Source of the DNA: Mytilus trossulus
Taxonomy: Eukaryota
Length of the DNA: 64,000 nt
Assembly: GCF_036588685.1 (NCBI RefSeq)
Contig: NW_026963333.1
Location: 1 to 64,000 of the forward strand
Direction of reading: 5' to 3'
Part shown: one piece after another, positions 11,973 to 64,000 of the stretch
Position numbering within the stretch: position 1 is the stretch's first letter
How the letters are laid out: every line of letters begins with the position of its first letter
Made by a program: the position numbers and the translations under genes
The notes under the pieces: model-generated
What the model was told of the DNA's origin: nothing
Databases searched by the model: none
The model's input: the letters and a program-made list of their open reading frames with translations, nothing else

Positions 11973-12208
11973 TTATTTTCTTTTAATCATCATGATAGAC
12001 TTTTTTAGTGGCTTTGTATTTTGTCTCCATCGATACCAGTAATTACCAGCACCCTTTGTGTCATTGTACCTCCCATTCAAATTAGCATAATCACAACTAT
12101 TAAACCACCAACCAGCATGCCTTTCAACAGCACAATTACCGCTGTTCCTATCGTTATCTGAATCTTTCGTGGTAAATTTCATGCCATTACCATTATGTAA
12201 TCCATCAC
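11973..12208 (-). CDS. Terminal exon of the fibrinogen-related (FReD) gene, left-arm copy, convergent with the thrombospondin-like gene
   Basis: Mirror of 14703-14938; GDGLHNGNGMKFTTKDSDND...CA....GWWFNSC..ANLNG.Y...W......LKKSIMMIK is the fibrinogen C-terminal signature. Confidence 0.85.
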
Positions 12209-13703
12209 CTAAAAAAAGAACGAAATAAGTGTATAATAGAACAAATAATATTGAAAGGATACAATAGATTTTAGATTTAACACCGTAATAATCGAAATCT
12301 GAGGTTTAAGATCAAGTTTTCCTGAGGGAAAAACAACCTCATTTATTACGAATAAATAATATATTATTTGAATCAACATATGGCAATGCAGTGCTTCGCA
12401 AATATATTTGCTGAACAAAGCTAGTATCCCTTGGCATTTTGTTTGGAAATGCAATTTTCTAAAAACGAGTTGAAAATGAAAATAGTTACGCATTATCGTA
12501 TTAATTTGAACTGATCTATATATAATAATCTGACAACTTGATGTAACGATTTCGAATTGAACCATTTAGTACTTTTCTTAAGTGGTATAATTCATTTTCA
12601 AAAATCAAATACTGCTTAAAATTGACTTTTGATGATGTATCGAACCAATGACTAAATGTCTTGCACTTAATTCATAATTGATATGACCGTCCTGGTTTAA
12701 ACGTTTTAAATTATTTTGTTTCTGTGTAAATTTTCAAATATTTAGATAAATTATGTATTCCATATGTCACTATTGAAACATCTTCGCCAAAAGCAACATG
12801 CGAGACAATAATTTCATTAATTTAGATCGTTCTAACGTGTTTGTCTTTTAAAGAATTCAGACTTGCAGATATAACCTATATATTACGAAAAATTGATGGA
12901 AAGCATTGAAATCGTCTCGTTTGTTATAGATTCAAATACTGAGATGATTGCTGTTGTGAAATTTGAGGTAAATGTCTGAAAAGAAACTGGAGAAACGGTA
13001 TCTGTGTTTTCTTCAATCTCTAGATCATGAGGATACATAGAATTTAGAATAATTAAGAAAAGTATGAATTGTTAATGGAAAGATAATCATCGAGTGAAAT
13101 CAAATTTTCAATCGTTATGAAACTTATAAGTATTTGTAGTTTCGTATGCATATAAATCCTCATACCACTACCAATAAAACACTACGTTAAAATTAAAATC
13201 GTCCAAAATACGGGGTAAACTTATGTTCTATATTAGGGTAAGCAGTTACAAACGACATGAGTTGCGTGCTCAGTCGTGAACCATTTGGATGTTATTTGCA
13301 TTGTGTGTTATTTGTAAATGCAGACCGTATGATAAAATGGAGAATTAAAAAATATACAGATCAATTAGCATATGTTGCATGAGAATTCAAATACACATTC
13401 AACCTCATAGTTTCTGCGATAATTTTGAAGAGATGTTTTCAAATTCACAATTAAGAGCTCAATATAGCTTCCGTTCTAGTAGCAATTTGTTAATAAGAAA
13501 ATCATGACATGAATCGCAAATCAGGAGAATAAATTAAAACCGATGGAAACACTTTAAGAAGAAAACAATAGAACAACTGTTAGACCAGGTGAGATAAAAT
13601 TTTAAAAAGGTATCTTACAAACAATGTATGATCATATTTTTTTATAATAAAATCTACATAGTTCCTTTAAAAAGTATACATATATGGTTGGTTTATGTTT
13701 CAG

Positions 13704-14938
13704 GAAATGATAATATACATTTGATTGCTGCTAATGGTGATCATGAACTAAGTGTGTATGTAGAAGACTTCAATGGCCTCCACGCTTATGCCAACTACTC
13801 ACACTTTACAATAGGTGACGAGAGTACGAAGTACCTGCTAGATATAACTGGATTTGTTGGTGATGCAGGTAACAAATTAAATGAACTACTGGGTGTCACA
13901 ATAAGAAATATATTTTGAGTTGAACCTTAAAAATTATGTATGAAGCCCGTCCATGTATACTCTTTTTACAGTATACATGTTTGCTTGGGATGACAATCAT
14001 ACATACTTTATAAATTGTTTTACATTTATATATAGGTTATATCTGCAAGTCTGAATTCTTTAAAAGACAAACACGTTAGAACGATCTAAATTAATGAAAT
14101 TATTGTCTCGCATGTTGCTTTTGGCGAAGATGTTTCAATAGTGACATATGGAATACATAATTTATCTAAATATTTGAAAATTTACACAGAAACAAAATAA
14201 TTTAAAACGTTTAAACCAGGACGGTCATATCAATTATGAATTAAGTGCAAGACATTTAGTCATTGGTTCGATACATCATCAAAAGTCAATTTTAAGCAGT
14301 ATTTGATTTTTGAAAATGAATTATACCACTTAAGAAAAGTACTAAATGGTTCAATTCGAAATCGTTACATCAAGTTGTCAGATTATTATATATAGATCAG
14401 TTCAAATTAATACGATAATGCGTAACTATTTTCATTTTCAACTCGTTTTTAGAAAATTGCATTTCCAAACAAAATGCCAAGGGATACTAGCTTTGTTCAG
14501 CAAATATATTTGCGAAGCACTGCATTGCCATATGTTGATTCAAATAATATATTATTTATTCGTAATAAATGAGGTTGTTTTTCCCTCAGGAAAACTTGAT
14601 CTTAAACCTCAGATTTCGATTATTACGGTGTTAAATCTAAAATCTATTGTATCCTTTCAATATTATTTGTTCTATTATACACTTATTTCGTTCTTTTTTT
14701 AGGTGATGGATTACATAATGGTAATGGCATGAAATTTACCACGAAAGATTCAGATAACGATAGGAACAGCGGTAATTGTGCTGTTGAAAGGCATGCTGGT
14801 TGGTGGTTTAATAGTTGTGATTATGCTAATTTGAATGGGAGGTACAATGACACAAAGGGTGCTGGTAATTACTGGTATCGATGGAGACAAAATACAAAGC
14901 CACTAAAAAAGTCTATCATGATGATTAAAAGAAAATAA
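13704..14938 (+). CDS. Last two exons of a fibrinogen C-terminal domain (FReD 3' half)
   Basis: Exon 13704-13868 (cag/ GNDNIHLIAANGDHELSVYVEDFNGLHAYANYSHFTIGDESTKYLLDITGFVGDA /gt; single copy, inside spacer 1) and exon 14703-14938 (TAA stop); the phase-1 junction is compatible. No upstream FReD exon on this strand precedes them. Confidence 0.9.
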
Positions 14939-17484
14939 GATATAAAAAGAATGTAGCTGTTTTTTGTTCCGATCCCAATTTTGAGTGTCTTGTCAATTTC
15001 ATTTTGTTTGTTTGGTTCATCGTATGCTTTTGCTTATTTTTGTTGTTTTAGTTTATTGATTTGTTGTTTGATTCAATTAGTTAAAACTTTTTTGTTATAT
15101 GTGTGTAATGGATTTCATTTCATACACCTCTTCACTCAAAGAGAATAATATGTTAATGACCCAGTTCCTATACCTGATTTAAGAACAGAATCGTTCACCT
15201 CAAAGTATTTCTCTTGAATAACTAAACAGTACGCATAATGTATTCAAACAAAATGTAAAATCACAAAAATACTGAAAATTGAATCATAAATTAATTCCCT
15301 AATCAAATGACAAAACTCATCAAACGAATTGACAACAACTGTCATATTCCTGACTAGCTTGGTACAGGCATTCTCAAATGTAGGAAATGGTGGATTGAAC
15401 CTGGTTTTATAGCGCTAAACCTCTCACTTATATGACAGTCGAATCAAATTATGTTATATTGGATGAATCAATTCATCCCTCTTACACGTCTTTTTTTTAA
15501 AACTTCATTCAACTCATATTGGAAAGCTGTACTGATAAATGTTGAAGATAAAAGAGAGTGAGAGGGAGAGAGACAAAAGCATGGCCAGCAAAGATAGAAA
15601 GAAAAAGGACAAACAATTAAAGAGTAAAGAAATATTCTACAATGGAAAAAAACGGATCAAAAAGAACCTCACAAAAACCAAGAGTAAATTACATATGGTG
15701 TACGATGGAAGAAGGGCTTCCTGATCCACGAAAGACACACAAATATAAACTCAGTGAACAGTAACAATGGGTGATGCTCCAATTAAGGAAATGAAGGTGG
15801 GAACAATAGCTAGCAAGAGCTAGAAAATTGCCAATTTCTTTGTCAAGAACAATTAAGTACTGTTCAGATTTTTTTTACAAATGTACAGATAAAAAGTGAG
15901 AATTTCATACTTGTAAATTTGTTTCTTTGCTTTTTTTGACAACATTGAACTAAACTGGCTACTAAACACTAATAATTATTTCATTATTTCCCTTTATTAA
16001 TGATTGAGCGAAAAAAATAATCCTATTATATCTCGTTACTAGTGCCCCTTTAAAATCTTTTCATATGGAAAGCATGCAAATGTTTCTATATATATAAAAA
16101 AGACTCAAGCCTTTCTTTATTACGCTATCAATGCTTCATTCAGGTTAAATATGATTAATTAAATTCCTTAGTTGAATTCCTCATTACAGGTTATTACTAA
16201 ATCATTTTTTATAAAACTTTCATACTCATTTTTATTTCAAAACAAAGACAATTTTTTTTCTTCATTTTAGACTGCAAACTTTTGAACTTTGTCATTTGTC
16301 AATAACAATGAGTTGCAGTACCATCAATAAAAGAGGTACAAAAGATAGTCAAACTCATAGATTGAAAATAAACTGACAACACCAAATAAAAAGACAAACA
16401 GACAAATAATAGTACAGAAGACACAACATAAAAAACTAAAGACTAAGCAACATGAATCCTACCAAAAACTGGGGGTGATTTCAGGTGCTCGGGAAGGGTA
16501 AGCAGATCCTGCTCACATGTGGCACCCGTTGTGTTGCTTATGTTATTACAATTCCAGTAAATAGTCTTATTCGATAGGTGACATTCATGAAAAGGGAATG
16601 GTATTGTAGTGACTAAATAAGGAACATATCAGATATCATCTGTGAAACGGTTATTCCCTAACGGTCAACCAACTCGTGATGGCATCCGTAAAATCCGAAG
16701 GGATGATTTCAACTTCATCATTTGGAACTGTTGGTTTAATAGCGTCTTAGTGAGCCGCCATCCTCTAATCTTGCTTAACCAGTGAATGGATATGCATGAA
16801 ATATTTCAGCCACAGAAGCAAACAGCAATCCATTTACCTTGTTTTCAGACACAAATGGTGTTGTGTAATTAATTTTTAAACAAAATTACACAAGTATTTT
16901 TCCAGATAAGTCTTCACATCCTCACCAACTATTCCATTTTAAAGCAAGTAATAGATTTGGATTGAATTTTAATAGTTTTCCAATATTGTTTAAGAGTATT
17001 GAAAGAAGCATTCTTATTGAATTCACAGTTACGAAAAAAGCTAATTCAAGCCAATTTCAAGGAATTAATTTGGTGGTCTGTTTGTGACCTCTATCCAGTT
17101 AAAAATAAAATCCTTACACCTACACTTCATTAATCTGTAATTTCATAATATCAAGTCCCCTCTTTATATTTAATCACAAAAGTGAATTAAAAATAAGATA
17201 TGAAGTAATAATTTTATACAAATGATTTTTATTATAAAATAAATTGTATTTTTATAACATGTTTGTTCTAAATAAAAATGTATAACAATCAACATTATTA
17301 AAAATATAACCATAAAAATATAAAATATATCACAGATTCAGTTTATTTCATTCAATATATCTAATAACAGTTCTTCAAACAAGGTAAAATTGCTGTGGCC
17401 CATAGTAGTATCATCACTCTCAAATATCTTAATATTTTCTTCTGGAATTTCTCTCCTTATAAGTAAGGTGAATCAATGTCCTTG

Positions 17485-20400
17485 CTAATTATCTGGATAT
17501 TCTAAATTAAATCTGCTATAATCCTGGAGGCTCTGCAAGAAAATAAAAATATACCAATTAAGTTACATCAGTTATTTAACAGGTTTGCCCAAGTGTATAT
17601 TTCACAGCAATATACATACTAGTACTTACATTTGGGATCCTCAATGCTTTTCATTTTGTTTTTTTCAACTGTTTTGATTTAAAAAAGGGACCAGCAAATA
17701 GGAGTTTGCTCTCATTATATTGACTCATCTTTGGCTTTTGACTATATGCATTAAGCTCTTACCATTTGTAGTGCAGTTTTTTTGCATAGGATTCGGTATA
17801 TTTCAAGTAAATCAAATAATATGTATGTCAAATATTTTACAGGTAAAAACATCAAAAATAGATAAATAACATTTAACTTACATCTTCAAAAATAGGACTT
17901 CCATATATTTGACCTGGTACCTCAAGTAGTCCCTCATCTTTCAGATACAGGGCACCAGTAGTCTGATCCATTTTATAGTATAGCTGCCCATATCTGTGGT
18001 ATGTTGGGTATTTTGTGATTGAAGGTAAATGGATGTGATCATTTACTTCTGTTCCTAGCAGTGCCACATTATAAAACACAAACTGGAATAATACCAAACC
18101 TTGGTTTACATAAAGGGTCTTAAAATATAAAGTCTTTATAAACTGTTCCCAACTACTAATCTGAACATTTCTCTTAGTTTTAAAAGTCTTATTCTTGAAA
18201 AAAAACTTACTCTTTTCTTCACCAAGTCAAATAACTACCCTAAATCCCAAGCCAAGTAAGAAGTATGGCAGTTGTTATAAAATAGTCTGGTTCTTTGTAT
18301 GTTCATGGTTGTTTCTGTTGCAATTCAGTGTTTCCATTGTTTCACTTGGTTTCAGTTTGAAACCTTGATTTTTTTAATCCAGTAACATGACTAATATACA
18401 GCAGTCTACTACTGTTGTCTTTATGTATTCCATAAAAGAGGGTCTATATTGGGTTAATAAAATGGAGAATAATGGACACAAAGAGCAAAATAGAGGGCTA
18501 AAATTTAAATTAAAGAATAGATAAAAAAGAATAGACAAAAAAATAAAATAAAAAAGGAATAGATAATAAACAGATTCCAAATCAGAAATAAAACCGAAAA
18601 ATGGGCAAACTAAATATAGAAAAATGCTTTGAAAAAACAATTAAAAAAAAATTAAGAACCCTCAATCCACACTCTATGCTACAGATCAGACTTGAACAGA
18701 ACCTAAATCAGTGATCAAGGTTAAAGTATTAAGTTAAGGAGCAAAGAGGAATTATGACTCAAAGTGAGATTTATTAATGTTCTTACCTCATCAACATTGC
18801 CTTTATAGAAGTTATTGGTGTTTTTCCCCAGGTAAAATATAGTGTCTTCATCTGTGGTATATTGTGTCTAAAAAATATAATTATTATAATATTCAATTCA
18901 AGATGGCTATCTTGCATGCATATATAATTTGATGACAGCAAGGTTATTGATCCTTTAAATTTGTCATTAAATGATAAACGAAAGATACCAGAGGGAGAGT
19001 CAAACTCATAAATCGAAAAATAAACTGAAAGAGATGAAAAAATGAAAGAAGACTACAGACAAACAATAGATGATGCAAAGAGAATCAAGTACGATATTAG
19101 TACTGTGAATGTTATATAACTTTTCCATTTTCAGGACTATAAAATCAACTAAATCTTGAGTAGATAGATATTTTTAATTTTTAACTAATGATGAAGAAAG
19201 TCAATGTACCTTGTCGTGTGCAGATTTATAAATTGTGTCTTTAAAAATATATTAAATGTATAAATCCATTAAACTCACCAGGTCAATAGGAGAAACATCA
19301 CCAGTTACACCAACTGAGTTTCCATTCACATACAAAGTCATTAAGTATTCTATAAAAAATTAAGACAACAAGTCTATTTTAAAATAAAATCATAAAATCT
19401 TTAGTCGAAAAATACGCCTGATGTATATAATTAAAAAAATATATTTTTGAAATATATTTGAAAAGTTTTTGTCCCATTTTATCTTTAAAAAGAAACAGTA
19501 TTAATAGTTCTCCTTTTGAAAAAAAAAAGATTTTTTTATTCAATCTTTAAAAAGATAGCATCTCCATGATATTAGTAAACAAAAATTACCGATCAAGGTC
19601 AGCACGTTTTTCATCATCAAGGATGGGTATGTCCACACGTAATAAAAACCTATTACTAAAGTTTAGCTCTCCATTTTCTAGGAGACAAATGTAACGCATT
19701 TCTATACTTTATCAGGAATGGAAAATTTAATCATTTTGTTTAACCTTATTTAAGATGTGAGCTGTGTCCGATAGATATAGACCTTATGCAAATGCAAGTG
19801 CACATTTTGTGAACATGTTTAAGATTTTGATTGAATTTCAATTCTTGTTTCCTTTAGCTCAATCAATTGGTTCAAAATTGAAGTAGTAAGCCATGAGGAA
19901 CAGAATTTGCGTTACCAGCAAAACAACCTTACATGCGTAGCGTTCAATATCGTAGCGGCTATATAGGGCTACGTAGATTTATGACTATTGAATGTGTAGC
20001 TAGCCTAGCTGCTACATAAATATTGAAGCAGCTAGGCAAGCTACTTGTTCAGTTGTCAAAAATCTATGTAGCCCTATGTTAATGTAGCTGCTACGATATT
20101 GAATGCAAGCCTGAAAGACAAGGTAGCTCAATCAATTGATTTTAAGTAAAAAAGCATAAAAAACATAATTTGTTTTACTAGCAAACAACCACCTGACATT
20201 TCTTTTTTAATCTCATTTGAACGTTCTAGTATAATCTCACCTGATTCATCATATATGTACAATAAACTGATCCATTGGTTTGTATTGATAGTGGATGTTG
20301 ATGTTACTGCATTGTTTCCGTAAGATCCATGTACAACACCTCCATCTAACCATAAACATATAGTTCTAGTGTCTGTACAAAATAATGGCATATCACCCCC

Positions 20401-22751
20401 TGCCAATGAGTCTATCTTAATCCATAGTCCAACGGAAAAACTGTTAATAGCAATAAATGCTTTTTAATACATCGATTGTTTTAAACAAAATAAGGAACAG
20501 TGAATATTTTTATCACTGTTGATTCATTATTATTCATGAGATACCACTTTTGTTGATTTTGTGGGTACGGGTGAACCATGCAATAAAATGTTAAATGAAG
20601 TACAGATTTTCTATAGGCTTGTTGAAGACTTTTGTAAAATCATGAAATCAAATATCCAAGTAAATTTTACTATGTCCTTAATCCATGGAAATTGGTACCC
20701 ATGAAAAAATAACTGACTCCACAGTAGTATACAATCAAGCCAGTTCAAAGTGTTGACTGAACATTTAAGTTAAAAAGCATGCAAAGTTAAAAAGGCGATG
20801 AAACTACTGATAAGCATCCTGTGTCTGTCATATAACCTTTGCCATCAGCACTTGATGTGATTTCAATTTTTTTAAATACTGATTTTATGTTTTAATCTTT
20901 CAATCTAATTTCCTACATACCAAATTTTTGATTTTTTTGTTAAAAGGCGAATTTTGGGTTTAAAAGAAATTAAGTTACAAAGTAGTTATAATTCAGATAT
21001 ATTTTTTTGGGGAAAATCCTGACAGTTTGTATACCTCAAGAATTAAATATTTCACATGTCAATTACAACAGAAGACATTATTTGTTATTATGCACTAAAA
21101 CCATAAGGACATGGAAATGAAATTCAATAATTTGAATACAAGGTTTTATATCTATTCTCACCTTTGATAAATGTCTAAACGAGTGATATTGGTAAGTACA
21201 ATATAATCATCCACTCCATCAAGATACAAAGCTTTATTGTCTCTGGGGAGGCACTGGACCTTCAGATCAGACCATAAAACTGATTCCTGGCCAAACTGGT
21301 ACACTCCAACACGACCTCCAGTTATACTGGTGTCATAGATGTCACCACTGTCAGCTAATAATGAATCTACATCATACAATTGGAATCTGAAATGATTATG
21401 AAAAATTATAACGTTTTGCTCTGTTTGGTTCTGGGTTTTGATACATATAGGAAGATGGGGTATGAGTGCCAATGAGACAACTCTCCATCCAAGTAACAGT
21501 TTATAAAAGTAAACCATTATAGGACAAGGTATGGCCTTCAACACAGAGCCTTGGCTCACACGGAATAGCAAGCTATAAAGGGCCCCAAAAATTACTAATG
21601 TAAAACCATTCAAACAGGAAAACCAACGGTCTAATCTATATAAAAACGAGAAACGAGAAACAAGTATGAACTACATAAACAGACGACAACTACATGTACT
21701 GTACATCAGATTTCTGACTAAGGACAGGTGCAAACATTTTGCAGCGGGATTAAATGTTTTAATGGTACCAAACCTTCTCCCTTATCTGAAACAATAATAT
21801 AACATCACAACATAAAAATACACGTAATCAATTATCAATTGGAAAGCTTAACTCAATCAAAAAACGTAAATTAACACACAATGAACGACAATAAATTTGT
21901 TCTGTGATACCTGAATGCAAATACATGGTAAATACAAATTATAAGGGATAAATAATTAAGGTCAAAAGTAAAAAAAAACAGGTTTAAACAAAGTAAAAGT
22001 ATGATACCACTGTGAAATGTTAACAATTTTTTGAAAATCATCACTTTTGAAAAAACCTGTGTCATATTATACACAGGTAAATGAAGCCTGCATTTGAAAG
22101 AAATCACCCAAGTGTTATCATTTTTTTTAATTTACATTTCATTTAAATGTACTAAAAGTTGCACATCAATTGTCCACAATAATTAAAGCATAAAAGTAAA
22201 ATCGTCTTCTAGTTCTCCAAAATTAAACCCAACTAAGCAGGCAAATTGGATATATTTATCGATATTTATTACCTCTTTTTCCTTCCAGTGGTGTCAATAA
22301 AGCATAACAAGAGGTTGCAGCCAATATAGTATTCAAAGTATAGTCCAACTGTGACATGCATTAAGTAAGGTATGAAATATTGTAGAAATAAATTTGTGAT
22401 ATAAATACCCATAAATATATATCCATCAAATACTGATGAAAGTGCTGACATACAATGTAGTCAGTATTGAAGTTGCATAAAGAATGAACCTATCATTTCA
22501 ACAATCCCATTTTATAGATATAAAAATATCTGTAGATGTCTTGGTGTTCCGTTTTAAATCTATACTTTAGTTATCTACCTGATCTTATTTAAATCTGTAT
22601 AATGCCATAGGAACCATTTATATGATGTGTAATTACTCCATCTTGTCATGTTACCATCCTGCCATAGTACTGTAACCTGGTTCACTGTTGTACTACTGTG
22701 CCATAGAGCATAAGCTAATGTTTGTCCAGGACCAGTATTGGAGTTCACTAC
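17485..22751 (-). pseudogene. Inverted partial duplicate of the last seven exons of the thrombospondin-like gene
   Basis: Mirror of 4158-9426. It lacks all upstream exons and carries a K->E change (LKDKG vs LKDEG). Confidence 0.85.
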
Positions 22752-22898
22752 CTATTTGTAAAGAAATATGGACACATTTAAATTAAATGATATGGACAAT
22801 AATCATAGTTTCAAAAAGTACTTATTAAATTACAAAAGTCCAATAAATAATACTTAAAAACATATGTTATCCGAAAGTATAAGTTGAACATGTTGAAA

Positions 22899-33099: not shown

Positions 33100-33600
33100 T
33101 GGTCTTTGCACATCATCGAGGTTGAAAGGACTATAATTGCCAAACAAAATCGATTTGCTTACCAATTTATGGTAAGGCACTAGAGGGAATTTTGATGAGA
33201 ACACCGGCCACCGTTGTCTGTGCGGTTCACTTACCATCCTATGTGAGTGACAGACCTAACACTTTTGTAGTCAAAACAGATAAATGTAACCAGGAAAGAA
33301 CTCATTGGGTGTTCTTTCATTTTCCTATCTCAAAACAGCCTGAGTTTTATACTCCCAAGGAGGAACACCATAGACATACCAGCAACATTTTAGAAATGTT
33401 CTCATCGTAAATCGACCCCTGTACTGTTTTTCTCGCTGTCCATTTCAACCCAACTTTTCGGAAATATGTGGATTGTACTGCGCCTATTACGTGAAAATGA
33501 GATGTCAGAGTATCAGGATGACAGATGTACTGAATGACGTTTCATCGGATGGCCTCGATGTTAACAACAGAAAACTCATTTCGTTATTTTCATTGAGATA
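33100..33600 (+). pseudogene. Decayed adenain-like cysteine protease of Polinton/Maverick (adintovirus) type
   Basis: Frameshifted pieces: VVCAVHLPSYVSDRPNTFVVKTDKCNQERTHWVFFHFP....EFY, then RNVLIVNRPLYCFSRCPFQPNFSEICGLYCAYYVKMRC...MTDVLNDVSSD.LDVNNRKL. These recall the NTD..HW / Q...S..CG.YC catalytic motifs. Confidence 0.7.
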
Positions 33601-52700: not shown

Positions 52701-55700
52701 TTCCACTTCTGAAATTCAAATAACCGCGCAGTTTGAGTCAAATTACAGGTTAAAATTGCAATTAACCATGTATTTTCGTAAACGTGTATATGAAATTATA
52801 AGGGAATACTGTAATTTGTGTCTACATAAGTCAGTACACACACAGTTTATCATCGGAAATTATAGGTTTTGTATTACAGTAAACTTAAATGTCGAAGTAT
52901 GCATTTGAAACACATTTGTATGTCAAACTTCGTCTGGAACATTCTATTTATAGCTAGAACGTATGCTTATGAAGCCGAAGATCTTTCGTATCAGTAACAA
53001 TATAAAAGAAAAACCTCACGCAACAATTAAAAATCAAATACAAAAAATAAAATGTTATCTAAGAAATTGAACTCTTTGGGTTCTTAATAAAATTAAAATA
53101 TGTGTTGTGATACCATGTACTTTGAAATCTTTGGGTTCCTAATAAAAATTTTAAAAAATGGGTTGGAATACTTATGTTTAATAATAAAGAGTGACTGCTT
53201 CAGTTATACTTTGCGGATGTTAAATTTCAGAAGCAGTACAAGTAAAAAGTGTATATTTGAAATTTAAAAAACAACAGCGTCAAACTAATAAATTCGTTAC
53301 TACAACAATTATTTTGAAAATAAGTTGAATTTTGATTTAGATTGGAATTGTTATTGTGTTTTAAATATAAACTTATATCCCGTTTGAATGGTTTTACACT
53401 AGTAATTTTGGGGCCCTTTATAGCTTGTTGTTCGGTGTGAGCCAAGGCTCCGTGTTGAAGGCCGTACTTTAACCTATAATAGTTTAATTTTTAAATTGTT
53501 ATTTGGATGGAGAGTTGTCTCTTTGGCACTCACACCACATCTTCCTATATCTATTATATGCATCTTTATTTGACTCCTCTAGATGATACGAAGAATGGAA
53601 CTTTATGTTACGCTTGTTCTGGTCAGCAGAGACCTGAATCCTGCCATACTGTATCTTTCTGTGAAAGTTTTGAGGTAAGATCAGTTTTGTTGGCTCTTAT
53701 TTACATTTTTTCATTCAAGGACTGCAGTTTATTTTTATTATTATTATCTACTAGCACTTCGTCGATACTAATACTGGTTGATTAGTAATCATGCAACATT
53801 TTCTTATCTTATATTAAGTGTTATCTTAATTTGGACTTCGTTTTAATTGGACTTCGTTTTGATTAAATTACAAAAAGAAGAAATTCAAATTTTCTTCTCC
53901 TTGTAATTTTGTTACTTTTCGATTATTTATTTCAAGCATTCAATATAAGAAAATGAAAACAACACTATAAATTGAACGCGTTCGAAAGATTTGTTTTATT
54001 TACATTCATCAGGAACGTTCAAAAGCGAACATTTGAAAGCCAACGATGTTTTTGAATCGGTAAAAAGATGATTATTTGTAATAAGATCAACTATTCCATT
54101 ACTAACGATCACCACATTTTAATAGTAAAGTTAAGATGGTTGACTGTAGGGAAACTTATCTGTTATCAATGTTATGAATTTAATGTATATAAAAAAAGTT
54201 AAAATAAAAAAGAACTCCCAGGAAAATTCAAAAAAGAAAGTCCCTGACCAAATGGCTAAATCAAACATTTCAGAAGCTCGAAAAAATGAAACTCGTCGAC
54301 TGGATAAAAACTGTCATATGCCTTTCTCTGTTGACACATTTGTTTGATTTTGTATTTTAACTGGTGAGGTCAGAAATCAAGACAAAGTTCAAGAGAAACA
54401 TCAAAGAAATTTTCAAACCCTTTAAGTCATAAAAAGATTGACTATCCTATGGGGAAAAAAAAACGGCGCACACCATAAAAGCCAAAGATTGAGCAACACG
54501 AACCCTACTAAAGTTTTTGACATAAGTCCCTTGTGAATTGAATTGAGAAATATAGAAATTGTAACAGATGAGTTGGGAACTGAAACAATGAAACGATGAG
54601 CCAATTGCAGTATTGTTTATTTATCTTTTTAGATGTGCTATTTAGAAGAAAAGTCTTATTTTGGAGAAAAGTTTTACAATAGTGGATGTAAAGTTAAGCA
54701 TGTAAGTTCATCTTGTACATTGCACTAAATTATAAAACTATGGCATACATGGATTAGCAGATAAACCGATTATAAAGATGTGAATGAGGTCGGATCTACT
54801 ATAGCCCTGAAAATTTGAGATTAATCTGTAAATAAAAATAAGAATAAATTTGATGTTAAAAGTAAAATCTTTGTAAGCCTTTGAGAAAATTAATCTCCCA
54901 AAACAACACCTCGATGGTCTCGTATAACGTTCATGTATTGACAAAATGAGTCGATATATACATCCTCCCAAATCCATTTAGCGATCCCCTGAAGCATTAC
55001 AAAGAACAGCATATACATGACACGTTATCTTTAATGATTTCCAAAACCAAAATATTTATATATCTTGGACTATTTGTTTTTGTTTTGTTTATAAAAGCTC
55101 ATTTCAAACAAGTAGTTCATTTATTTCACAGATTTGCGATGTCCAGTTTAATAAACCTATCGTTGGACGCCGATCTATTAAGCAATCCAGGTCAACATCA
55201 CAGCTATCATGCTGCGACAATAATCTTTGTAACGACATTGACCGTCTGCATGGACAAGTCCAATCGACTATTCAAACAACACCTGTTCACGTCTCTAATA
55301 GTACTCAAACAACACCTGTTCACGTCTCTGAAAGTACCACTAGAACTACAACAATGTCTTCAGGTATTTAAAGTACTATATTACTTACATTGGGATACTT
55401 TGTGTAATTAAAATCTGCAACACATGTCTTGATTTTCATACACAATATACAAATAAAACTACAACTTAAGAACAGATTATAAGTTAATGATTATCTGCAG
55501 ATTTTGTTTTATTCAAATAATCAATTTGAGGAAATTGTATATGCATTGTACCGGGGACTTAAAACTTTTATGAATTTTTACATGTAAAAAAAGACTCCAA
55601 AATTGCCATTTTTGATGAAGGATTTAACACCAACACTATACCTTATAAAGACGTTTGATTTAAAAATACAGCACATGTGCAAAGCACATAACTTTTAGAC

Positions 55701-58139
55701 GGAGTTGATACATCTCTATACTTTCTTTCTTTTTGTTCCAGAAGTGTCTTTGCTTTAAATGTCTAATAGTAAGTTTCAATAAATGTCGAATTATCAACTT
55801 TAAAATACTCAAACGAATATACGATTCAAGATATGGTGTTCTCCTGCATATGATCGATATTATGCATAAGTGAACCGTATTTTACGCTTTGTTGTGAGAA
55901 AAAAAAGAAATAACCAGAAAACTAGAGTTTAAAACCCAATGTATACGGATATTTGCTGAAAATATGTTATTAAAAATAATTTCATGTCAAACGTGTATAG
56001 CTTCTTTCATAATAACTTTAATGGCAAGAAATCACAAGCTGAATACACCACAAAGGTTTAAGATAAATGACTATGAAGTCATAATGAGTCATAATGGACT
56101 GCTGACTGAGGAACTGAATAATAAACAGAGACGAACAGACTTCAAACATAAGATCTTTTTGACTTGATTATAAGTAAAAATTGTCCGTCATCTGTCTTAT
56201 CTAACCGAAATGTATCATTATCAACTATTTGTTTTTTTGGAATTCAGCTGATGTTTGTTTTATTGTTAATTGATTTTCATTATAATTCAATAAAAAGGAA
56301 ACATCCATTTATATGAAAGTTTAATCATTAACAGCAAAATTTTTCCTCATCATACAGCTACCTCAATAATTTACTACGGCTGCTATATTTTGCATAAAAT
56401 GTTTGTTACGCAATGCTCTTCGACAACGGACTTTAAATTGATTGGCCATACAAGTTTTATTCGGGCGATTCTGTTCGTATATAAAGACGAAACAAGTATC
56501 TGGTAAACAAAATTATGATACAGGTATCTTCGATGACTTTTCCGTACAATTTACACAATTATGATTTGTTTTCAAAGGACCGCCTACAGAATGTGCTGAT
56601 ATAGCCTCAGATAAAGATGGAGTGTACACTATCATTCCAAAAGGAAGTTCTCAGGAAATATCAGTGTTCTGTATAATGAGAGGAGGAAACAAATGGACGG
56701 TAAACTTACAATATGTTTTTAGAGCGTTTACATTTTATGTGGTTTGCCTTCAACTGACTTTAATATCTTCCAAGTGCTGCTGTTACATTACATTATTCAT
56801 TTTGAGTTGCATGAAACCCGGTTTGCACTTTGACCTTGATAATATGGTAAATAAGAAGCAATCGTAGTATAAAGATGTTAATTAATTGTAAATCAATTTT
56901 AAATATACAAGTCATGAAAAAAACGAGAAAAATTCTGACCCCAGTAATAATCGAGACCGTGTGTGGCCAAAGAGTAAGTGCATGCAAATTCTAACTCCAT
57001 CAAACTGTTGCAATAGAGATTTCAAGACACATTCAATAAATTTACTGATTAAACGACTATCCAGTTATTTAACGAACCAAGACAAGTAACACATGTTTCT
57101 CGTGATTTTAAACACAGATAGCTAGTATTGGTAACAGGTTAACAAGAATATATATCGAAATCAAATCAATCCTATTATTTTGGTTGATCAAAATGTGTAT
57201 TTCATGTTTCGTTTAATGTAATACGAAAAAAAATCAATTCTTACGATTCTATTTCGCATTGTTTAATTAATATCTGTACTGTATCCTGTAGAAATATAGT
57301 GTTTACATTTTTGTCCTTTGTGTCTTGTTTATTTTGTGTAAAAATTAAAAGACAAACAGACAAACAATAGTACACATGACACAACAAAGAAAACTAAAGA
57401 TTAGCAACACGAACCCCACCAAAACTTGGGGTGATCTCAGCTATGTGCTCCGGAAGGGTAAGCAGATCCTGCTCCACATGTGGCACCCGTCGTGTTGGTC
57501 ATGTTATATCAAATCCGGTAAGTAGTCTAATTCGGTAGGTCACTTTCATGGAAGGGAAGGGGATTGTAGTTGCGACATAAGGAACATATCCGATATCATC
57601 TGTGAAACGGTTATTCCATAACGGTCAACCAACTCGTGATGGCGTCCGTAAAATTTACGAAGTGATGATAAATATATTTGCTTAAATTTACTAGTAATAT
57701 AAACATTATAACAAAGAGTTGTTTTGAACTTGCCAAGGAGGGACACTACCAACAATAACAAAACTGACTAGACTTTAAACAAGTACATGTCAGCGTTAGC
57801 GAATTTCTAATCCCAATTAAAATAAAGATCCAACGGAGGAGAAAAAAGTTATATAACATATGTAATGTAAGGAGCACTTCAGTGCTGCATAAAAATCCCG
57901 AATCATTACTTTCACTCATTTCAATACAGTGTGTCCTCGTCGTTACATACTAATAAATACATAAACAAGTAAATAACATCTAATTGGTAGAATACTAAAT
58001 GTCATTCAGTAGATAAATAACATAGGAGAGGAATAATTTTAGGTTATACAGAGAAGGATAAATGGAACAGAAGATTTTTATAGAACTTGTTCGGAGTATA
58101 AAACTGGGTTTGGTACTGTTCAGACAGAGTATTGGCTAG
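46792..58139 (+). CDS. 5' part of a secreted protein: signal peptide, 2x Ly6/uPAR (three-finger)-like domains, Thr/Ser linker, N-terminal half of a fibrinogen domain
   Basis: Phase-compatible exons: 46792-46807 (MRRII; tentative, weak donor), 48594-48632 (VFILLALFSKSTF), 49893-49969 (ALTCFDCQNISHPRFCEQVRKCKDNQ), 51108-51179 (ICGLERE...NVGCMTPQ), 52359-52455 (VCD...CLSCCSTDLCNTNGC), 53583-53674 (TLCYACSGQQRPESCHTVSFCESFE), 54633-54701 (MCYLEE...NSGCKVKH), 55132-55363 (ICD...SCCDNNLCN + T/S linker), 56578-56699 (GPPTECADI...GVYTI.P......VFC.M....WT), 58043-58139 (VIQRRINGTEDFYRTCSEYKTGFGTVQTEYWL). No downstream exon on this strand. Confidence 0.85.
47378..47472 (+). repeat. Degenerate tRNA-like sequence (tRNA-derived SINE head or pseudo-tRNA)
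   Basis: A-box-like tagtcgagaggtcta and B-box gttcgaatcc about 70 bp apart; no clean cloverleaf seen. Confidence 0.5.
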
Positions 58140-61100
58140 GTAATAAAACACTATAATAGTATTTTTATAGATTCTGACTTAATTTAATATCTCAAAATAA
58201 GTAAAGGTTATGGCATGTTATCTATTTCTCGTACGAAGAGGTATAATTGTTCGTGTCTCAATGCAAAAAGTAACGACGAGGACACACTGTATTGAAATGA
58301 GTGAAAGTAATGATTCGGAATTTTTATGCAGCACTGAAGTGCTCCTTACATTACATATGTTATATAACTTTTTTCTCCTCCGTTGGATCTTTATTTTAAT
58401 TGGGATTAGAAATTCGCTAACGCTGACATGTACTTGTTTAAAGTCTAGTCAGTTTTGTTATTGTTGGTAGTGTCCCTCCTTGGCAAGTTCAAAACAACTC
58501 TTTGTTATAATGTTTATATTACTAGTAAATTTAAGCAAATATATTTATCATCACTTCGTAAATTTTACGGACGCCATCACGAGTTGGTTGACCGTTATGG
58601 AATAACCGTTTCACAGATGATATCGGATATGTTCCTTATGTCGCAACTACAATCCCCTTCCCTTCCATGAAAGTGACCTACCGAATTAGACTACTTACCG
58701 GATTTGATATAACATGACCAACACGACGGGTGCCACATGTGGAGCAGGATCTGCTTACCCTTTACAATGCGAAATAGAATCGTAAGAATTGATTTTTTTT
58801 CGTATTACATTAAACGAAACATGAAATACACATTTTGATCAACCAAAATAATAGGATTGATTTGATTTCGATATATATTCTTGTTAACCTGTTACCAATA
58901 CTAGCTATCTGTGTTTAAAATCACGAGAAACATGTGTTACTTGTCTTGGTTCGTTAAATAACTGGATAGTCGTTTAATCAGTAAATTTATTGAATGTGTC
59001 TTGAAATCTCTATTGCAACAGTTTGATGGAGTTAGAATTTGCATGCACTTACTCTTTGGCCACACACGGTCTCGATTATTACTGGGGTCAGAATTTTTCT
59101 CGTTTTTTTCATGACTTGTATATTTAAAATTGATTTACAATTAATTAACATCTTTATACTACGATTGCTTCTTATTTACCATATTATCAAGGTCAAAGTG
59201 CAAACCGGGTTTCATGCAACTCAAAATGAATAATGTAATGTAACAGCAGCACTTGGAAGATATTAAAGTCAGTTGAAGGCAAACCACATAAAATGTAAAC
59301 GCTCTAAAAACATATTGTAAGTTTACCGTCCATTTGTTTCCTCCTCTCATTATACAGAACACTGATATTTCCTGAGAACTTCCTTTTGGAATGATAGTGT
59401 ACACTCCATCTTTATCTGAGGCTATATCAGCACATTCTGTAGGCGGTCCTTTGAAAACAAATCATAATTGTGTAAATTGTACGGAAAAGTCATCGAAGAT
59501 ACCTGTATCATAATTTTGTTTACCAGATACTTGTTTCGTCTTTATATACGAACAGAATCGCCCGAATAAAACTTGTATGGCCAATCAATTTAAAGTCCGT
59601 TGTCGAAGAGCATTGCGTAACAAACATTTTATGCAAAATATAGCAGCCGTAGTAAATTATTGAGGTAGCTGTATGATGAGGAAAAATTTTGCTGTTAATG
59701 ATTAAACTTTCATATAAATGGATGTTTCCTTTTTATTGAATTATAATGAAAATCAATTAACAATAAAACAAACATCAGCTGAATTCCAAAAAAACAAATA
59801 GTTGATAATGATACATTTCGGTTAGATAAGACAGATGACGGACAATTTTTACTTATAATCAAGTCAAAAAGATCTTATGTTTGAAGTCTGTTCGTCTCTG
59901 TTTATTATTCAGTTCCTCAGTCAGCAGTCCATTATGACTCATTATGACTTCATAGTCATTTATCTTAAACCTTTGTGGTGTATTCAGCTTGTGATTTCTT
60001 GCCATTAAAGTTATTATGAAAGAAGCTATACACGTTTGACATGAAATTATTTTTAATAACATATTTTCAGCAAATATCCGTATACATTGGGTTTTAAACT
60101 CTAGTTTTCTGGTTATTTCTTTTTTTTCTCACAACAAAGCGTAAAATACGGTTCACTTATGCATAATATCGATCATATGCAGGAGAACACCATATCTTGA
60201 ATCGTATATTCGTTTGAGTATTTTAAAGTTGATAATTCGACATTTATTGAAACTTACTATTAGACATTTAAAGCAAAGACACTTCTGGAACAAAAAGAAA
60301 GAAAGTATAGAGATGTATCAACTCCGTCTAAAAGTTATGTGCTTTGCACATGTGCTGTATTTTTAAATCAAACGTCTTTATAAGGTATAGTGTTGGTGTT
60401 AAATCCTTCATCAAAAATGGCAATTTTGGAGTCTTTTTTTACATGTAAAAATTCATAAAAGTTTTAAGTCCCCGGTACAATGCATATACAATTTCCTCAA
60501 ATTGATTATTTGAATAAAACAAAATCTGCAGATAATCATTAACTTATAATCTGTTCTTAAGTTGTAGTTTTATTTGTATATTGTGTATGAAAATCAAGAC
60601 ATGTGTTGCAGATTTTAATTACACAAAGTATCCCAATGTAAGTAATATAGTACTTTAAATACCTGAAGACATTGTTGTAGTTCTAGTGGTACTTTCAGAG
60701 ACGTGAACAGGTGTTGTTTGAGTACTATTAGAGACGTGAACAGGTGTTGTTTGAATAGTCGATTGGACTTGTCCATGCAGACGGTCAATGTCGTTACAAA
60801 GATTATTGTCGCAGCATGATAGCTGTGATGTTGACCTGGATTGCTTAATAGATCGGCGTCCAACGATAGGTTTATTAAACTGGACATCGCAAATCTGTGA
60901 AATAAATGAACTACTTGTTTGAAATGAGCTTTTATAAACAAAACAAAAACAAATAGTCCAAGATATATAAATATTTTGGTTTTGGAAATCATTAAAGATA
61001 ACGTGTCATGTATATGCTGTTCTTTGTAATGCTTCAGGGGATCGCTAAATGGATTTGGGAGGATGTATATATCGACTCATTTTGTCAATACATGAACGTT

Positions 61101-64000
61101 ATACGAGACCATCGAGGTGTTGTTTTGGGAGATTAATTTTCTCAAAGGCTTACAAAGATTTTACTTTTAACATCAAATTTATTCTTATTTTTATTTACAG
61201 ATTAATCTCAAATTTTCAGGGCTATAGTAGATCCGACCTCATTCACATCTTTATAATCGGTTTATCTGCTAATCCATGTATGCCATAGTTTTATAATTTA
61301 GTGCAATGTACAAGATGAACTTACATGCTTAACTTTACATCCACTATTGTAAAACTTTTCTCCAAAATAAGACTTTTCTTCTAAATAGCACATCTAAAAA
61401 GATAAATAAACAATACTGCAATTGGCTCATCGTTTCATTGTTTCAGTTCCCAACTCATCTGTTACAATTTCTATATTTCTCAATTCAATTCACAAGGGAC
61501 TTATGTCAAAAACTTTAGTAGGGTTCGTGTTGCTCAATCTTTGGCTTTTATGGTGTGCGCCGTTTTTTTTTCCCCATAGGATAGTCAATCTGTTTATGAC
61601 TTAAAGGGTTTGAAAATTTCTTTGATGTTTCTCTTGAACTTTGTCTTGATTTCTGACCTCACCAGTTAAAATACAAAATCAAACAAATGTGTCAACAGAG
61701 AAAGGCATATGACAGTTTTTATCCAGTCGACGAGTTTCATTTTTTCGAGCTTCTGAAATGTTTGATTTAGCCATTTGGTCAGGGACTTTCTTTTTTGAAT
61801 TTTCCTGGGAGTTCTTTTTTATTTTAACTTTTTTTATATACATTAAATTCATAACATTGATAACAGATAAGTTTCCCTACAGTCAACCATCTTAACTTTA
61901 CTATTAAAATGTGGTGATCGTTAGTAATGGAATAGTTGATCTTATTACAAATAATCATCTTTTTACCGATTCAAAAACATCGTTGGCTTTCAAATGTTCG
62001 CTTTTGAACGTTCCTGATGAATGTAAATAAAACAAATCTTTCGAACGCGTTCAATTTATAGTGTTGTTTTCATTTTCTTATATTGAATGCTTGAAATAAA
62101 TAATCGAAAAGTAACAAAATTACAAGGAGAAGAAAATTTGAATTTCTTCTTTTTGTAATTTAATCAAAACGAAGTCCAATTAAAACGAAGTCCAAATTAA
62201 GATAACACTTAATATAAGATAAGAAAATGTTGCATGATTACTAATCAACCAGTATTAGTATCGACGAAGTGCTAGTAGATAATAATAATAAAAATAAACT
62301 GCAGTCCTTGAATGAAAAAATGTAAATAAGAGCCAACAAAACTGATCTTACCTCAAAACTTTCACAGAAAGATACAGTATGGCAGGATTCAGGTCTCTGC
62401 TGACCAGAACAAGCGTAACATAAAGTTCCATTCTTCGTATCATCTAGAGGAGTCAAATAAAGATGCATATAATAGATATAGGAAGATGTGGTGTGAGTGC
62501 CAAAGAGACAACTCTCCATCCAAATAACAATTTAAAAATTAAACTATTATAGGTTAAAGTACGGCCTTCAACACGGAGCCTTGGCTCACACCGAACAACA
62601 AGCTATAAAGGGCCCCAAAATTACTAGTGTAAAACCATTCAAACGGGATATAAGTTTATATTTAAAACACAATAACAATTCCAATCTAAATCAAAATTCA
62701 ACTTATTTTCAAAATAATTGTTGTAGTAACGAATTTATTAGTTTGACGCTGTTGTTTTTTAAATTTCAAATATACACTTTTTACTTGTACTGCTTCTGAA
62801 ATTTAACATCCGCAAAGTATAACTGAAGCAGTCACTCTTTATTATTAAACATAAGTATTCCAACCCATTTTTTAAAATTTTTATTAGGAACCCAAAGATT
62901 TCAAAGTACATGGTATCACAACACATATTTTAATTTTATTAAGAACCCAAAGAGTTCAATTTCTTAGATAACATTTTATTTTTTGTATTTGATTTTTAAT
63001 TGTTGCGTGAGGTTTTTCTTTTATATTGTTACTGATACGAAAGATCTTCGGCTTCATAAGCATACGTTCTAGCTATAAATAGAATGTTCCAGACGAAGTT
63101 TGACATACAAATGTGTTTCAAATGCATACTTCGACATTTAAGTTTACTGTAATACAAAACCTATAATTTCCGATGATAAACTGTGTGTGTACTGACTTAT
63201 GTAGACACAAATTACAGTATTCCCTTATAATTTCATATACACGTTTACGAAAATACATGGTTAATTGCAATTTTAACCTGTAATTTGACTCAAACTGCGC
63301 GGTTATTTGAATTTCAGAAGTGGAACCAATAGAAATGATTGTGATCAATATAATGTAACGAATACTAAATCAAAATAATAATTGAGCATAAATTCAATAC
63401 AGCAAAACAAAAAAAAATAAACCAAACCCCTTACATAAATGTAAAATCCCAAAACAAAACTAAAGCAGCAAAATCAACTAAACAAGAATGAACTATCTCA
63501 ATTCCAAATAAAACATAAAAAGAAGCACAAACACAAAAAGACAAACGTAAAATTTAGGCGATAAGATTACCTTGTTCACCACATCCATTGGTGTTACAGA
63601 GATCTGTCGAACAGCAACTCAGACAAGGCTGATTTGTACCCACTCCTACACTGCTGGTGTCGCATACCTGAAACAATTGTTTGATAGTACCATACATTAA
63701 TCAGTTACTAGTCTAGTAACTCAGATACCAGAATAGTAGAGTTAAGTTTATTGAATAAAATTACTTGAGCGAGAAACTGAGTTTTATGTTCAATTAACGT
63801 CTGGAATTAAATGTGTCTTGAAGTGTAAAACATACAATTCAAGTTCAACATTAAAGTAACTTTCTTTCAAATATTAAGTAAACCAATTTATAAGTATTTC
63901 AAATATATGTAGTCTGTTTAACATAAACGTCGTGAAGATGAATTCCTTGTAATGCCTATTGATCATGCTAAATAATCAGATCTTACTTTCGGAGCAATAT
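52026..64000. repeat. Palindrome 2: arms <=52026-57946 and 58270->=64000, spacer 57947-58269 (323 bp); the outer boundary lies outside the window
   Basis: Mirror ORF coordinate sums are 116026 (outer) and 116216 (inner). The difference is a ~190-bp segment (57263-57453) missing from the right arm; there are rare substitutions (~54434, ~57897). Confidence 0.98.
59327..63667 (-). CDS. Minus-strand copy of the Ly6-Ly6-fibrinogen gene exons (continues beyond the window)
   Basis: Mirror exons 63667-63571, 62443-62352, 61393-61325, 60894-60663 and 59448-59327. Confidence 0.8.

What the first reader, a model, noticed from the sequence alone, without database searches (positions are those of the whole stretch)
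11973..64000. One fibrinogen-domain gene split across two palindromes, each spacer holding a single-copy exon; flipping both spacers restores it
Seen: spacer 2 holds the exon VIQRR...EYWL-G (58043-58139, phase-1 donor). Spacer 1 holds the next exon of a fibrinogen domain, G-NDNIH...GDA (13704-13868, phase-1 acceptor); together they give the canonical EYWLGNDNIH. The flanking exons are duplicated in the arms. As assembled, the + strand has the 3' half 44 kb upstream of the 5' half, and the - strand has the correct exon order but lacks these two exons, so no intact gene exists. Inference: inverting both spacers yields a complete minus-strand gene (…59448-59327, spacer-2 exon, ~44-kb intron, spacer-1 exon, 12208-11973). 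Established: recombination between long inverted arms flips the spacer, and assemblers can mis-orient such spacers. The locus is therefore (a) a double mis-orientation, (b) a fixed rearrangement that killed the gene, or (c) a two-switch invertible immune-lectin locus in which only 1 of 4 isomers is coding. Caveat: the long intron would contain same-sense exons and poly(A) sites of other genes.
Basis: partly seen in the sequence, partly recalled or inferred. Interest (0 to 1): 0.9.

Follow-up and report, generated by a model that had tools for sequence, protein, structure and literature searches.

The report
Lectin gene split by paired fold-backs
On a spare, unplaced copy of a mussel chromosome-9 region, one immune-lectin gene is cut at a single point inside an intron and each cut end is capped by a mirror copy of its own flank; this looks like a botched DNA-break repair on one haplotype, not a gene switch, and the other copy of the region keeps the gene whole.

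Summary
Four exons cover one fibrinogen domain without gap or overlap. The two middle exons lie single-copy in the spacers of two near-perfect palindromes, and the two outer exons are duplicated in the arms.

Three things change the reading:
- Palindrome 2 is far larger than the window. Its arms run 22899-57946 and 58270 to about 104900 of the scaffold, and its left arm starts exactly where palindrome 1's right arm ends.
- The genome is Mytilus trossulus. The scaffold is colinear with chromosome 9 at 16.885-16.960 Mb, where the intact orthologue (XP_063400797.1, 439 aa) is annotated.
- On chromosome 9 the two "spacers" are adjacent, 10-12 nt apart, inside one intron of about 0.95 kb. Both palindromes therefore share one breakpoint.

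Best reading (0.55): one break in intron 9, with both ends repaired by fold-back copying (35.0 kb and 8.9 kb) and rejoined. This leaves about 44 kb of inverted flank copies in the intron.

The arms differ by a retroelement insertion, a 190-nt deletion and scattered substitutions. They are therefore distinct copies, not one sequence used twice.

A programmed two-switch locus has no support.

The parts
1..4010 (-). Outer flank T. Read in reverse, it continues the locus downstream exactly as on chromosome 9. It includes a 67-nt satellite at 237-1517.
   Evidence: Window 1500-4900 is 100% identical to C9:16955365-16958766 on the minus strand.
4011..12883 (-). Palindrome 1, left arm (A'). It carries the mirror copy of the last fibrinogen exon, including its stop, at 12208-11973.
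12884..14027 (+). Spacer 1. This is the 3' part of the broken intron 9 (12884-13703), then exon 10 (13704-13868), then the start of intron 10. Junction J3 is at 12883|12884 and is blunt.
   Evidence: Spacer 1 is single copy in the genome. Its first base aligns to C9:16925792, 12 nt after the end of the spacer-2 match. The exon hits Fibrinogen_C positions 79-132.
14028..22898 (+). Palindrome 1, right arm (A), with the last exon at 14703-14938. It ends at junction J2 (22898|22899).
   Evidence: The last exon hits Fibrinogen_C positions 144-219.
22899..57946 (+). Palindrome 2, left arm (M+B). It holds a tandem array of small secreted-peptide genes with the two N runs. It also holds exons 1-8 of the lectin gene (about 48596-56699: signal peptide, two three-finger Ly6/uPAR-like domains, a Thr-rich linker, and the first fibrinogen exon at 56578-56699).
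   Evidence: The arm is colinear with C9:16886910-16925459. Exons were mapped with P0153 and P0003.
57947..58269 (+). Spacer 2. This is the end of intron 8, then exon 9 (58043-58139), then the first 130 nt of the broken intron 9. Junction J1 is at 58269|58270, with a 4-nt AAAA filler at 58266-58269.
   Evidence: Spacer 2 is single copy. It matches C9:16925460-16925779. The exon hits Fibrinogen_C positions 45-77.
58270..64000 (-). Palindrome 2, right arm (B'M'). It runs on to about 104900 of the scaffold and then continues colinear with chromosome 9 upstream of the locus. It carries mirror copies of exons 1-8 (exon 8 at 59448-59327). Relative to the left arm it has a 190-nt deletion and a 7.4-kb retroelement insertion.

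Best explanation
**What the scaffold is.** C58 is an alternative haplotype of Mytilus trossulus chromosome 9 at about 16.885-16.960 Mb. In it, a lectin gene with two three-finger (LU) domains and a fibrinogen domain (orthologue of MgFREP12) was broken once, inside intron 9.

**What happened at the break.**
- 10-12 nt were lost at the break.
- Each broken end is now joined to an inverted copy of its own flank. The left end carries 35,048 nt of inverted upstream sequence after a 323-nt loop (spacer 2). The right end carries 8,871 nt of inverted downstream sequence after a 1,144-nt loop (spacer 1).
- The two inverted copies are joined to each other at 22898|22899.
- The net result is the ancestral colinear locus with about 44 kb of inverted flank copies sitting in intron 9.

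**Inferred mechanism.** Fold-back repair acted at both ends of one double-strand break. Either the 3' ends self-primed and copied before the extended ends annealed, or hairpin-capped ends were replicated, broken and rejoined.

**Consequences.**
- The second route can give any of the four spacer orientations directly.
- Later homologous exchange between the arms can also flip the spacers.
- As assembled, both middle exons face away from the outer exons, so this haplotype's copy is non-coding. The chromosome-9 allele is intact.

**Shown versus inferred.** Shown: the anatomy, the shared breakpoint, the colinear flanks and the distinct arms. Inferred: the mechanism, and that the junctions exist in the animal's DNA.
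For: **(1) Shared breakpoint.**
- Spacer 2 maps to C9:16925460-16925779 and spacer 1 starts at C9:16925792.
- The same adjacency holds in the second chromosome-9 paralogue.
- The split intron sums to 949 nt, against 941 nt in chromosome-9 gene 2.
- My estimate of the chance that two independent palindromes share an edge within about 12 nt in a 45-kb locus is about 5e-4.

**(2) Colinear outer flanks.**
- Window 1500-4900 matches C9:16955365-16958766 at 100%.
- The reverse complement of C58:104901-106400 matches C9 upstream of 16886910 at 95.7%.
- The chromosome-9 50 kb has no inverted repeat of 300 nt or more.

**(3) Abutting arms.**
- Palindrome 1's right arm ends where palindrome 2's left arm begins.
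- This joins the C9 equivalents 16956255|16886910 with 2-nt microhomology and no shared repeat.

**(4) The arms are distinct copies.**
- A C/T difference lies 50 nt from spacer 2.
- The right arm has a 190-nt deletion; the ancestral state is kept in the left arm and in C9.
- The right arm has a 7,376-nt retroelement insertion.
- Derived substitutions occur on both arms of both palindromes.
- A read folded back on itself would give identical arms.

**(5) Similar arm divergence.** It is 4.5e-4 in palindrome 1 and about 3e-4 in inner palindrome 2. This fits one event.

**(6) Precedent.**
- Single-copy spacers of kilobase scale, small insertions or short microhomology at junctions are the described marks of fold-back inverted duplications. 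Reported spacers are 766-70,466 bp, with 2-8 bp microhomology or insertions (PMC3907307).
- Fold-back templated inverted insertions at breaks are known in yeast at 5-34 bp scale (PMC11724301).
Against:
- The scaffold is unplaced and sits in a 'hap1' assembly beside its own allele.
- Arm identity jumps from 99.3% to 99.96% exactly at the second N run. If that run is a true scaffold gap, the outer left arm is linked to the inner one only by scaffolding.
- At the outer end, the left arm, the right arm and C9 are about equidistant (97.2, 98.2 and 98.15%). A single recent copying event alone does not predict this. It needs later recombination, a template switch to the homologue, or conversion limited to the inner arms.
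- J3 is blunt and J1 has a filler, so the classic inverted microhomology of fold-back priming is not seen.
- A fold-back at both ends of one break, rejoined inside one chromosome at this size, has no described germline precedent that I found.
Confidence: 0.55

Rival explanations
1. Assembly or scaffolding error. The real haplotype is a plain or tandemly duplicated colinear locus with intact gene copy or copies. The two inverted junctions (58269|58270 and 12883|12884) are false joins.
For: - The scaffold is unplaced and lies next to its own allele in a haplotype-1 assembly.
- The N runs sit inside the left arm, and an identity step falls exactly at one of them.
- The inner 3.77 kb of each palindrome-1 arm are identical, so only reads longer than 8.7 kb can orient spacer 1.
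- The join at 22898|22899 has the form of a tandem-duplication junction.
- No reads were checked.
Against: - A tandem or plain locus would give many reads across the spacer-2 to spacer-1 junction. An assembler would have to drop them in favour of two false joins.
- Those two false joins would have to fall within 12 nt of the same ancestral point.
- Read-through fold-back artefacts give palindromes with no spacer and identical arms. Here the spacers are 323 and 1,144 nt, and the arms differ 50 nt and 500 nt from spacer 2.
- The junctions carry a 10-12-nt loss and a 4-nt filler, which is typical of cellular repair.
Confidence: 0.25
2. The palindromes are real, and the spacers toggle passively by homologous exchange between the long arms. 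All four isomers, including the coding-competent one, then segregate in the population or occur somatically. The gene is sometimes expressed from this haplotype through a 44-kb intron.
For: - The inner arms are 8.9 kb and at least 17.8 kb long at 99.93-99.96% identity.
- Recurrent flipping between such inverted repeats is documented in humans, in primate X palindromes and in yeast (10.1101/2021.12.20.472354, PMC8327919, PMC9731477).
- The geometry of the both-flipped isomer is correct.
Against: - There is no evidence for any other isomer.
- The long intron would hold antisense copies of the gene's own exons 1-8 and 11, which would pair with the pre-mRNA.
- No transcript data were obtained.
Confidence: 0.1
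3. A programmed two-switch invertible immune-lectin locus.
For: Only the formal fact that one of the four isomers is coding.
Against: - The arms are ordinary genic and intergenic DNA colinear with chromosome 9.
- I noticed no recombinase gene or short recombination sites, but I ran no systematic search for either.
- The chromosome-9 allele and the orthologues in three Mytilus species have a plain 0.9-2.4-kb intron at this point.
- The structure is explained by a single break.
Confidence: 0.02
4. The scaffold comes from a minor cell population with a rearranged genome (somatic mosaic or transmissible neoplasia cells) and is not a germline haplotype.
For: - Fold-back inversions are typical of unstable somatic genomes.
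- Three allele-like versions of the outer arm exist in an assembly of one diploid.
Against: - A minor population would rarely reach assembly depth.
- The arms carry a later retroelement insertion and substitutions on both copies, which implies many generations since the event.
- A duplication on one haplotype explains the three versions.
Confidence: 0.03

Closest known systems
Fold-back inverted duplications with a single-copy spacer (human constitutional inv-dup; fold-back inversions of breakage-fusion-bridge cycles), PMC3907307
   Same: - Inverted arms around a short non-duplicated spacer that ends at the original break.
- Spacer sizes of 0.3 and 1.1 kb lie near the reported range (766 bp and up).
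- The junctions show short microhomology or a small insertion.
   Different: - Known cases are one-sided and go with a terminal deletion, translocation or ring.
- Here both ends of one break carry a fold-back and are rejoined to each other, so nothing but 10-12 nt is lost.
- No inverted microhomology is seen at the two fold-back junctions.
Templated inverted insertions at double-strand breaks by fold-back priming (yeast), PMC11724301
   Same: An inverted copy of sequence next to the break is inserted at the break.
   Different: The described insertions are about 5-34 bp. Here they are 35.0 and 8.9 kb, come from both sides, and lie in an animal haplotype.
Large near-identical palindromes with invertible spacers (primate X/Y palindromes; recurrent inversions between inverted repeats), PMC8327919 and 10.1101/2021.12.20.472354
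   Same: Kilobase arms above 99.9% identity around a unique spacer. Spacer orientation is expected to be unstable over evolutionary time.
   Different: - Those palindromes carry whole genes in the arms and are conserved.
- Here the palindromes cut through one gene and are absent from the allelic chromosome-9 copy.
Mussel gene presence/absence variation and hemizygosity, PMC7653742
   Same: An immune-type lectin gene is functional on one haplotype and not on the other in a Mytilus individual.
   Different: The loss is by a complex inverted duplication inside the gene, not by absence of the segment.
MgFREP12 / fibrinogen-like protein 1 of Mytilus (A0A0C5PW19, XP_063400797.1, XP_052067220.1)
   Same: Same architecture and exon order. 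The exon peptides are 84-97% identical and tile residues 224-428 of MgFREP12.
   Different: The C58 copy is interrupted between exons 9 and 10.

Membership tests
Fibrinogen_C domain (PF00147) lectin gene | One complete domain covered once by the exons | tested here: met
   Profile positions 5-43, 45-77, 79-132 and 144-219. The first exon's hit alone is below the cut-off (12.8 bits). The exons tile orthologues without gap or overlap.
LU-LU-FReD architecture (MgFREP12 type) | Two three-finger (Ly6/uPAR-like) domains upstream of the fibrinogen domain in the same gene | tested here: met
   Exons matching residues 9-221 of P0153 lie at 48596-55326 on the same strand. There are weak PF00087 hits. 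The orthologues carry PF00087, PF01064 and PF00147.
Fold-back inverted duplication | Inverted arms separated by a single-copy spacer that ends at the break | tested here: met
   The spacers are single copy in the genome. Their outer edges meet at one ancestral point.
Fold-back inverted duplication | Inverted microhomology of 2 bp or more, or an insertion, at the spacer-inversion junction | tested here: inconclusive
   J1 has a 4-nt filler. J3 is blunt. J2 has 2 nt. The ancestral sequence is known only from 80-86% identical paralogues.
Fold-back inverted duplication | The junctions are present in the organism's DNA, with arm depth twice spacer depth | not testable with these tools
Site-specific invertible switch | Short defined recombination sites and a dedicated recombinase | not tested
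   I ran no systematic search for a recombinase gene or recombination sites. Indirectly, the arms are 9-45 kb of ordinary locus DNA colinear with chromosome 9, which does not look like a switch.
Read-through (hairpin) assembly artefact | Identical arms, no spacer, symmetry centre at a molecule end | tested here: not met
   The spacers are 323 and 1,144 nt. The arms differ by a single-base substitution 50 nt from the spacer, a 190-nt indel, a 7.4-kb insertion and further substitutions.

The most novel reading that the evidence does not exclude
The structure is a heritable four-isomer locus made in one step by fold-back repair at both ends of a single break. Ordinary exchange between the arms flips either spacer. 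In the population, or in somatic cells, the lectin gene on this haplotype would then toggle between a broken form and a coding form with a 44-kb self-complementary intron.
Probability: 0.07. Interest if true: 0.75.

Novelty: new variant of a known kind. Interest (0 to 1): 0.4.

Why it matters
If the junctions are real, this is a clean, base-resolved natural example of both ends of one chromosome break being repaired by fold-back copying over tens of kilobases and then rejoined.

- This outcome is known only at the scale of a few bases in yeast, and only one-sided in human disease and cancer.
- It would also show one concrete route by which mussel immune-lectin genes become present on one haplotype and dead on the other.

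If it is an assembly error, the case is a useful warning. Unplaced scaffolds of haplotype-resolved mussel assemblies can mimic spectacular gene "switches".

Tried and rejected

- A protein search with the spacer-1 open frame found only one 77-aa fragment at 88% identity on a 902-nt contig, which is of no use for the junction.
- Earlier scan notes list many other palindromes in this genome, but none was checked with reads.

**Joined coding sequence**
- I did not search, fold or print a joined coding sequence. Exons were searched one by one by reference, and frame continuity was checked by exon-length arithmetic.
- One in-script joined translation used wrong exon borders and told nothing. Nothing from it was saved.

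**Readings rejected**
- A foldback transposon: the arms are unique genic DNA colinear with chromosome 9.
- dupINVdup: the order of the inverted blocks does not fit.
- Re-insertion of a circular copy: it needs more breaks and a roughly 3% coincidence.
- A microsatellite-caused contig break at the shared point: no repeat lies at the spacer edges.

The N runs were not filled or looked up.
Full report
**What is in the window.** A self-comparison finds two near-perfect palindromes.
- Palindrome 1 has arms 4011-12883 and 14028-22898. They are 8,873 nt long and differ at six columns: four transitions and two one-base indels. The nearest difference is 3.77 kb from the centre.
- Its spacer S1 is 12884-14027.
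- Palindrome 2 has spacer S2 at 57947-58269.
- The window has two N runs, at 34082-34237 and 39996-40154, and 31% G+C.

**The exons.**
- Exon 9 (58043-58139, VIQRR...EYWL, phase-1 donor) lies in S2.
- Exon 10 (13704-13868, NDNIH...GDA, phase-1 acceptor and donor) lies in S1.
- Exon 8 (56578-56699) and the last exon (14703-14938, with stop) lie in the arms. Their mirror copies are at 59448-59327 and 12208-11973.
- The four peptides hit Pfam Fibrinogen_C at profile positions 5-43, 45-77, 79-132 and 144-219.
- The exon lengths 120+97+165+236 = 618 nt keep one frame to the stop.

**Which genome, and which gene.**
- The window is the first 64 kb of scaffold C58 of a 1.30-Gb assembly in 541 pieces.
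- A search with the last exon found a 419-aa Mytilus californianus protein. Its 90% cluster holds XP_063400797.1 of Mytilus trossulus, encoded on a contig of 82,295,107 nt. That is exactly the length of piece C9 here.
- Size and scaffold number match PNRI_Mtr1.1.1.hap1 (PMC11304980).
- The gene is the orthologue of M. galloprovincialis FREP12. It has a signal peptide, two three-finger (Ly6/uPAR-like) domains, a Thr-rich linker and a fibrinogen domain.
- Its exons 1-8 lie at about 48596-56699 on the plus strand of the left arm of palindrome 2. They are mirrored in the right arm.
- The C58 exon peptides tile residues 224-428 of FREP12 without gap or overlap. The "one gene" part of the reading therefore stands.
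- I searched exons one by one. I did not search a joined model.

**Palindrome 2 is much larger than the window.** With the next 42 kb of the scaffold:
- The left arm runs 22899-57946 and the right arm runs from 58270 to about 104900.
- The inner 17.8 kb are 99.96% identical.
- Beyond the second N run identity drops to 99.3%, and further out to about 97%.
- The right arm has a derived 190-nt deletion about 500 nt from S2.
- There is a C/T difference 50 nt from S2.
- The right arm has a 7,376-nt insertion made of 2.19 identical copies of a 3,370-nt element with a reverse-transcriptase ORF.
- Derived substitutions sit on both arms of both palindromes.
- The arms are therefore two physically distinct copies, not one stretch used twice.

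**The key result.** Chromosome piece C9 at 16.885-16.960 Mb is colinear with C58 at 78-100% identity, depending on the block.
- There, S2 matches 16925460-16925779 and S1 begins at 16925792, on the same strand.
- The same adjacency is seen in a second tandem paralogue on C9.
- The C58 intron pieces, 130 nt after exon 9 and 819 nt before exon 10, sum to 949 nt. The intron of the second C9 gene is 941 nt.
- The two "spacers" are therefore the two halves of one ordinary intron, and both palindromes share one breakpoint.
- About 10-12 nt are missing at that point, and four A's look like filler.
- My estimate of the chance that two unrelated palindromes share an edge that closely is about 5e-4.

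**The rest of the anatomy.**
- Read in reverse, window 1500-4900 is 100% identical to C9:16955365-16958766. This is the sequence that follows the locus on chromosome 9.
- Read in reverse, C58:104901-106400 continues upstream of the locus as on chromosome 9, at 95.7%.
- The right arm of palindrome 1 ends at 22898 and the left arm of palindrome 2 starts at 22899. This joins the equivalents of C9:16956255 and 16886910 with 2-nt microhomology and no shared repeat.
- In reverse complement the scaffold therefore reads: upstream flank, M B | S2' B' M' | A' S1' | A, downstream flank.
- That is the normal locus with inverted copies of both flanks placed between its two halves.
- The allelic 50 kb of C9 has no inverted repeat of 300 nt or more. 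It encodes the intact annotated protein.

**How it most likely arose (inference).**
- One double-strand break in intron 9 explains everything.
- Each end folded back 0.3 or 1.1 kb inward and copied its own flank, 35,048 nt on one side and 8,871 nt on the other. The two extended ends were then joined.
- Alternatively, hairpin-capped ends were replicated into two palindromic molecules that broke and rejoined. That route gives any of the four spacer orientations with equal ease, so no later flip is required.
- Kilobase single-copy spacers and junctions with short microhomology or small insertions are the described marks of fold-back inverted duplication in humans (PMC3907307).
- Fold-back templated inverted insertions at breaks are known at base scale in yeast (PMC11724301).
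- Arm divergence is similar in the two palindromes (4.5e-4 and about 3e-4), which fits one event.
- As assembled, the gene on this haplotype is broken.

**What does not fit neatly.**
- At the outer end of palindrome 2 the two arms are no closer to each other than to C9 (97.2, 98.2 and 98.15%).
- The step from 99.3% to 99.96% falls exactly at the second N run.
- Possible explanations are later meiotic exchange with another haplotype, a template switch to the homologue, arm-to-arm conversion that stops at the triplet repeat, or a scaffold join between contigs of different origin.
- Both N runs follow CTG-type repeats, are multiples of three (156 and 159), and sit at the same place in successive 5.85-kb units. 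I could not tell whether they are true gaps or masked letters.
- Their flanks are colinear with the other arm and with C9.

**Artefact or real.**
- I could not lay reads.
- Arguments against an artefact: the arms differ close to the centre; the spacers are not zero; two false joins would have to hit the same 12 nt; and a true colinear or tandem locus would supply many reads across the S2-S1 junction, which the assembly lacks.
- Arguments for caution: the scaffold is unplaced, it lies beside its allele in a haplotype-1 assembly, and there is the identity step at an N run.
- My odds: a real fold-back rearrangement at about 0.55, or about 0.65 including the passive-toggling variant. Mis-assembly about 0.25. 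Somatic origin about 0.03. A programmed switch about 0.02.

**Verdict.**
- The single-gene inference is supported.
- The "two-switch invertible locus" is not supported.
- The locus is best seen as a heterozygous, gene-breaking complex inverted duplication born from one break. It is a new variant of a known kind of rearrangement, of moderate interest until reads confirm the three junctions.

Noticed in passing
L011:686-8061 (scaffold C58:64686-72061): A 7,376-nt insertion is present only in the right arm. It consists of 2.19 perfectly identical tandem copies of a 3,370-nt element with a 1000-aa wrap-around ORF (weak RVT_1 hit). It lies in intron 3 of the right-arm gene copy and is probably a very young Penelope-like retroelement.
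   Followed up: partly
window 34082-34237 and 39996-40154: Both N runs follow CTG/CTGTTG triplet repeats, are multiples of three (156 and 159), and sit at the same position of successive 5.85-kb tandem units. Arm-to-arm identity jumps from 99.3% to 99.96% exactly at the second one.
   Followed up: partly
window 22899-25200 versus C58:102599-104900 versus C9:16886910-16889211: The three copies are about equidistant (97.2, 98.2 and 98.15%). This gives three allele-like versions in one diploid assembly.
   Followed up: partly
window 237-1517: A 67-nt satellite, 19 copies at 92% match, lies in the flank that is 100% identical to chromosome 9.
   Followed up: no
C9:16938853-16942653 (L037): A second tandem paralogue lies on chromosome 9. 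For it I found only the four fibrinogen exons and no three-finger exons upstream. The C58 haplotype has a single gene whose 3' flank resembles this second copy, so gene number differs between haplotypes.
   Followed up: partly
window 57454-57946 and 58270-58762: The innermost 0.5 kb of both arms of palindrome 2 is a fragment of the same retroelement family as the 3,370-nt insertion (92% to C58:64923-65252). The fold-back point therefore lies at the edge of an old repeat fragment.
   Followed up: no
window 12905-13091: Positions 22-208 of spacer 1 are a high-copy repeat of about 190 nt (74-77% identical to dozens of loci on all chromosomes). It starts about 20 nt from the shared breakpoint.
   Followed up: no
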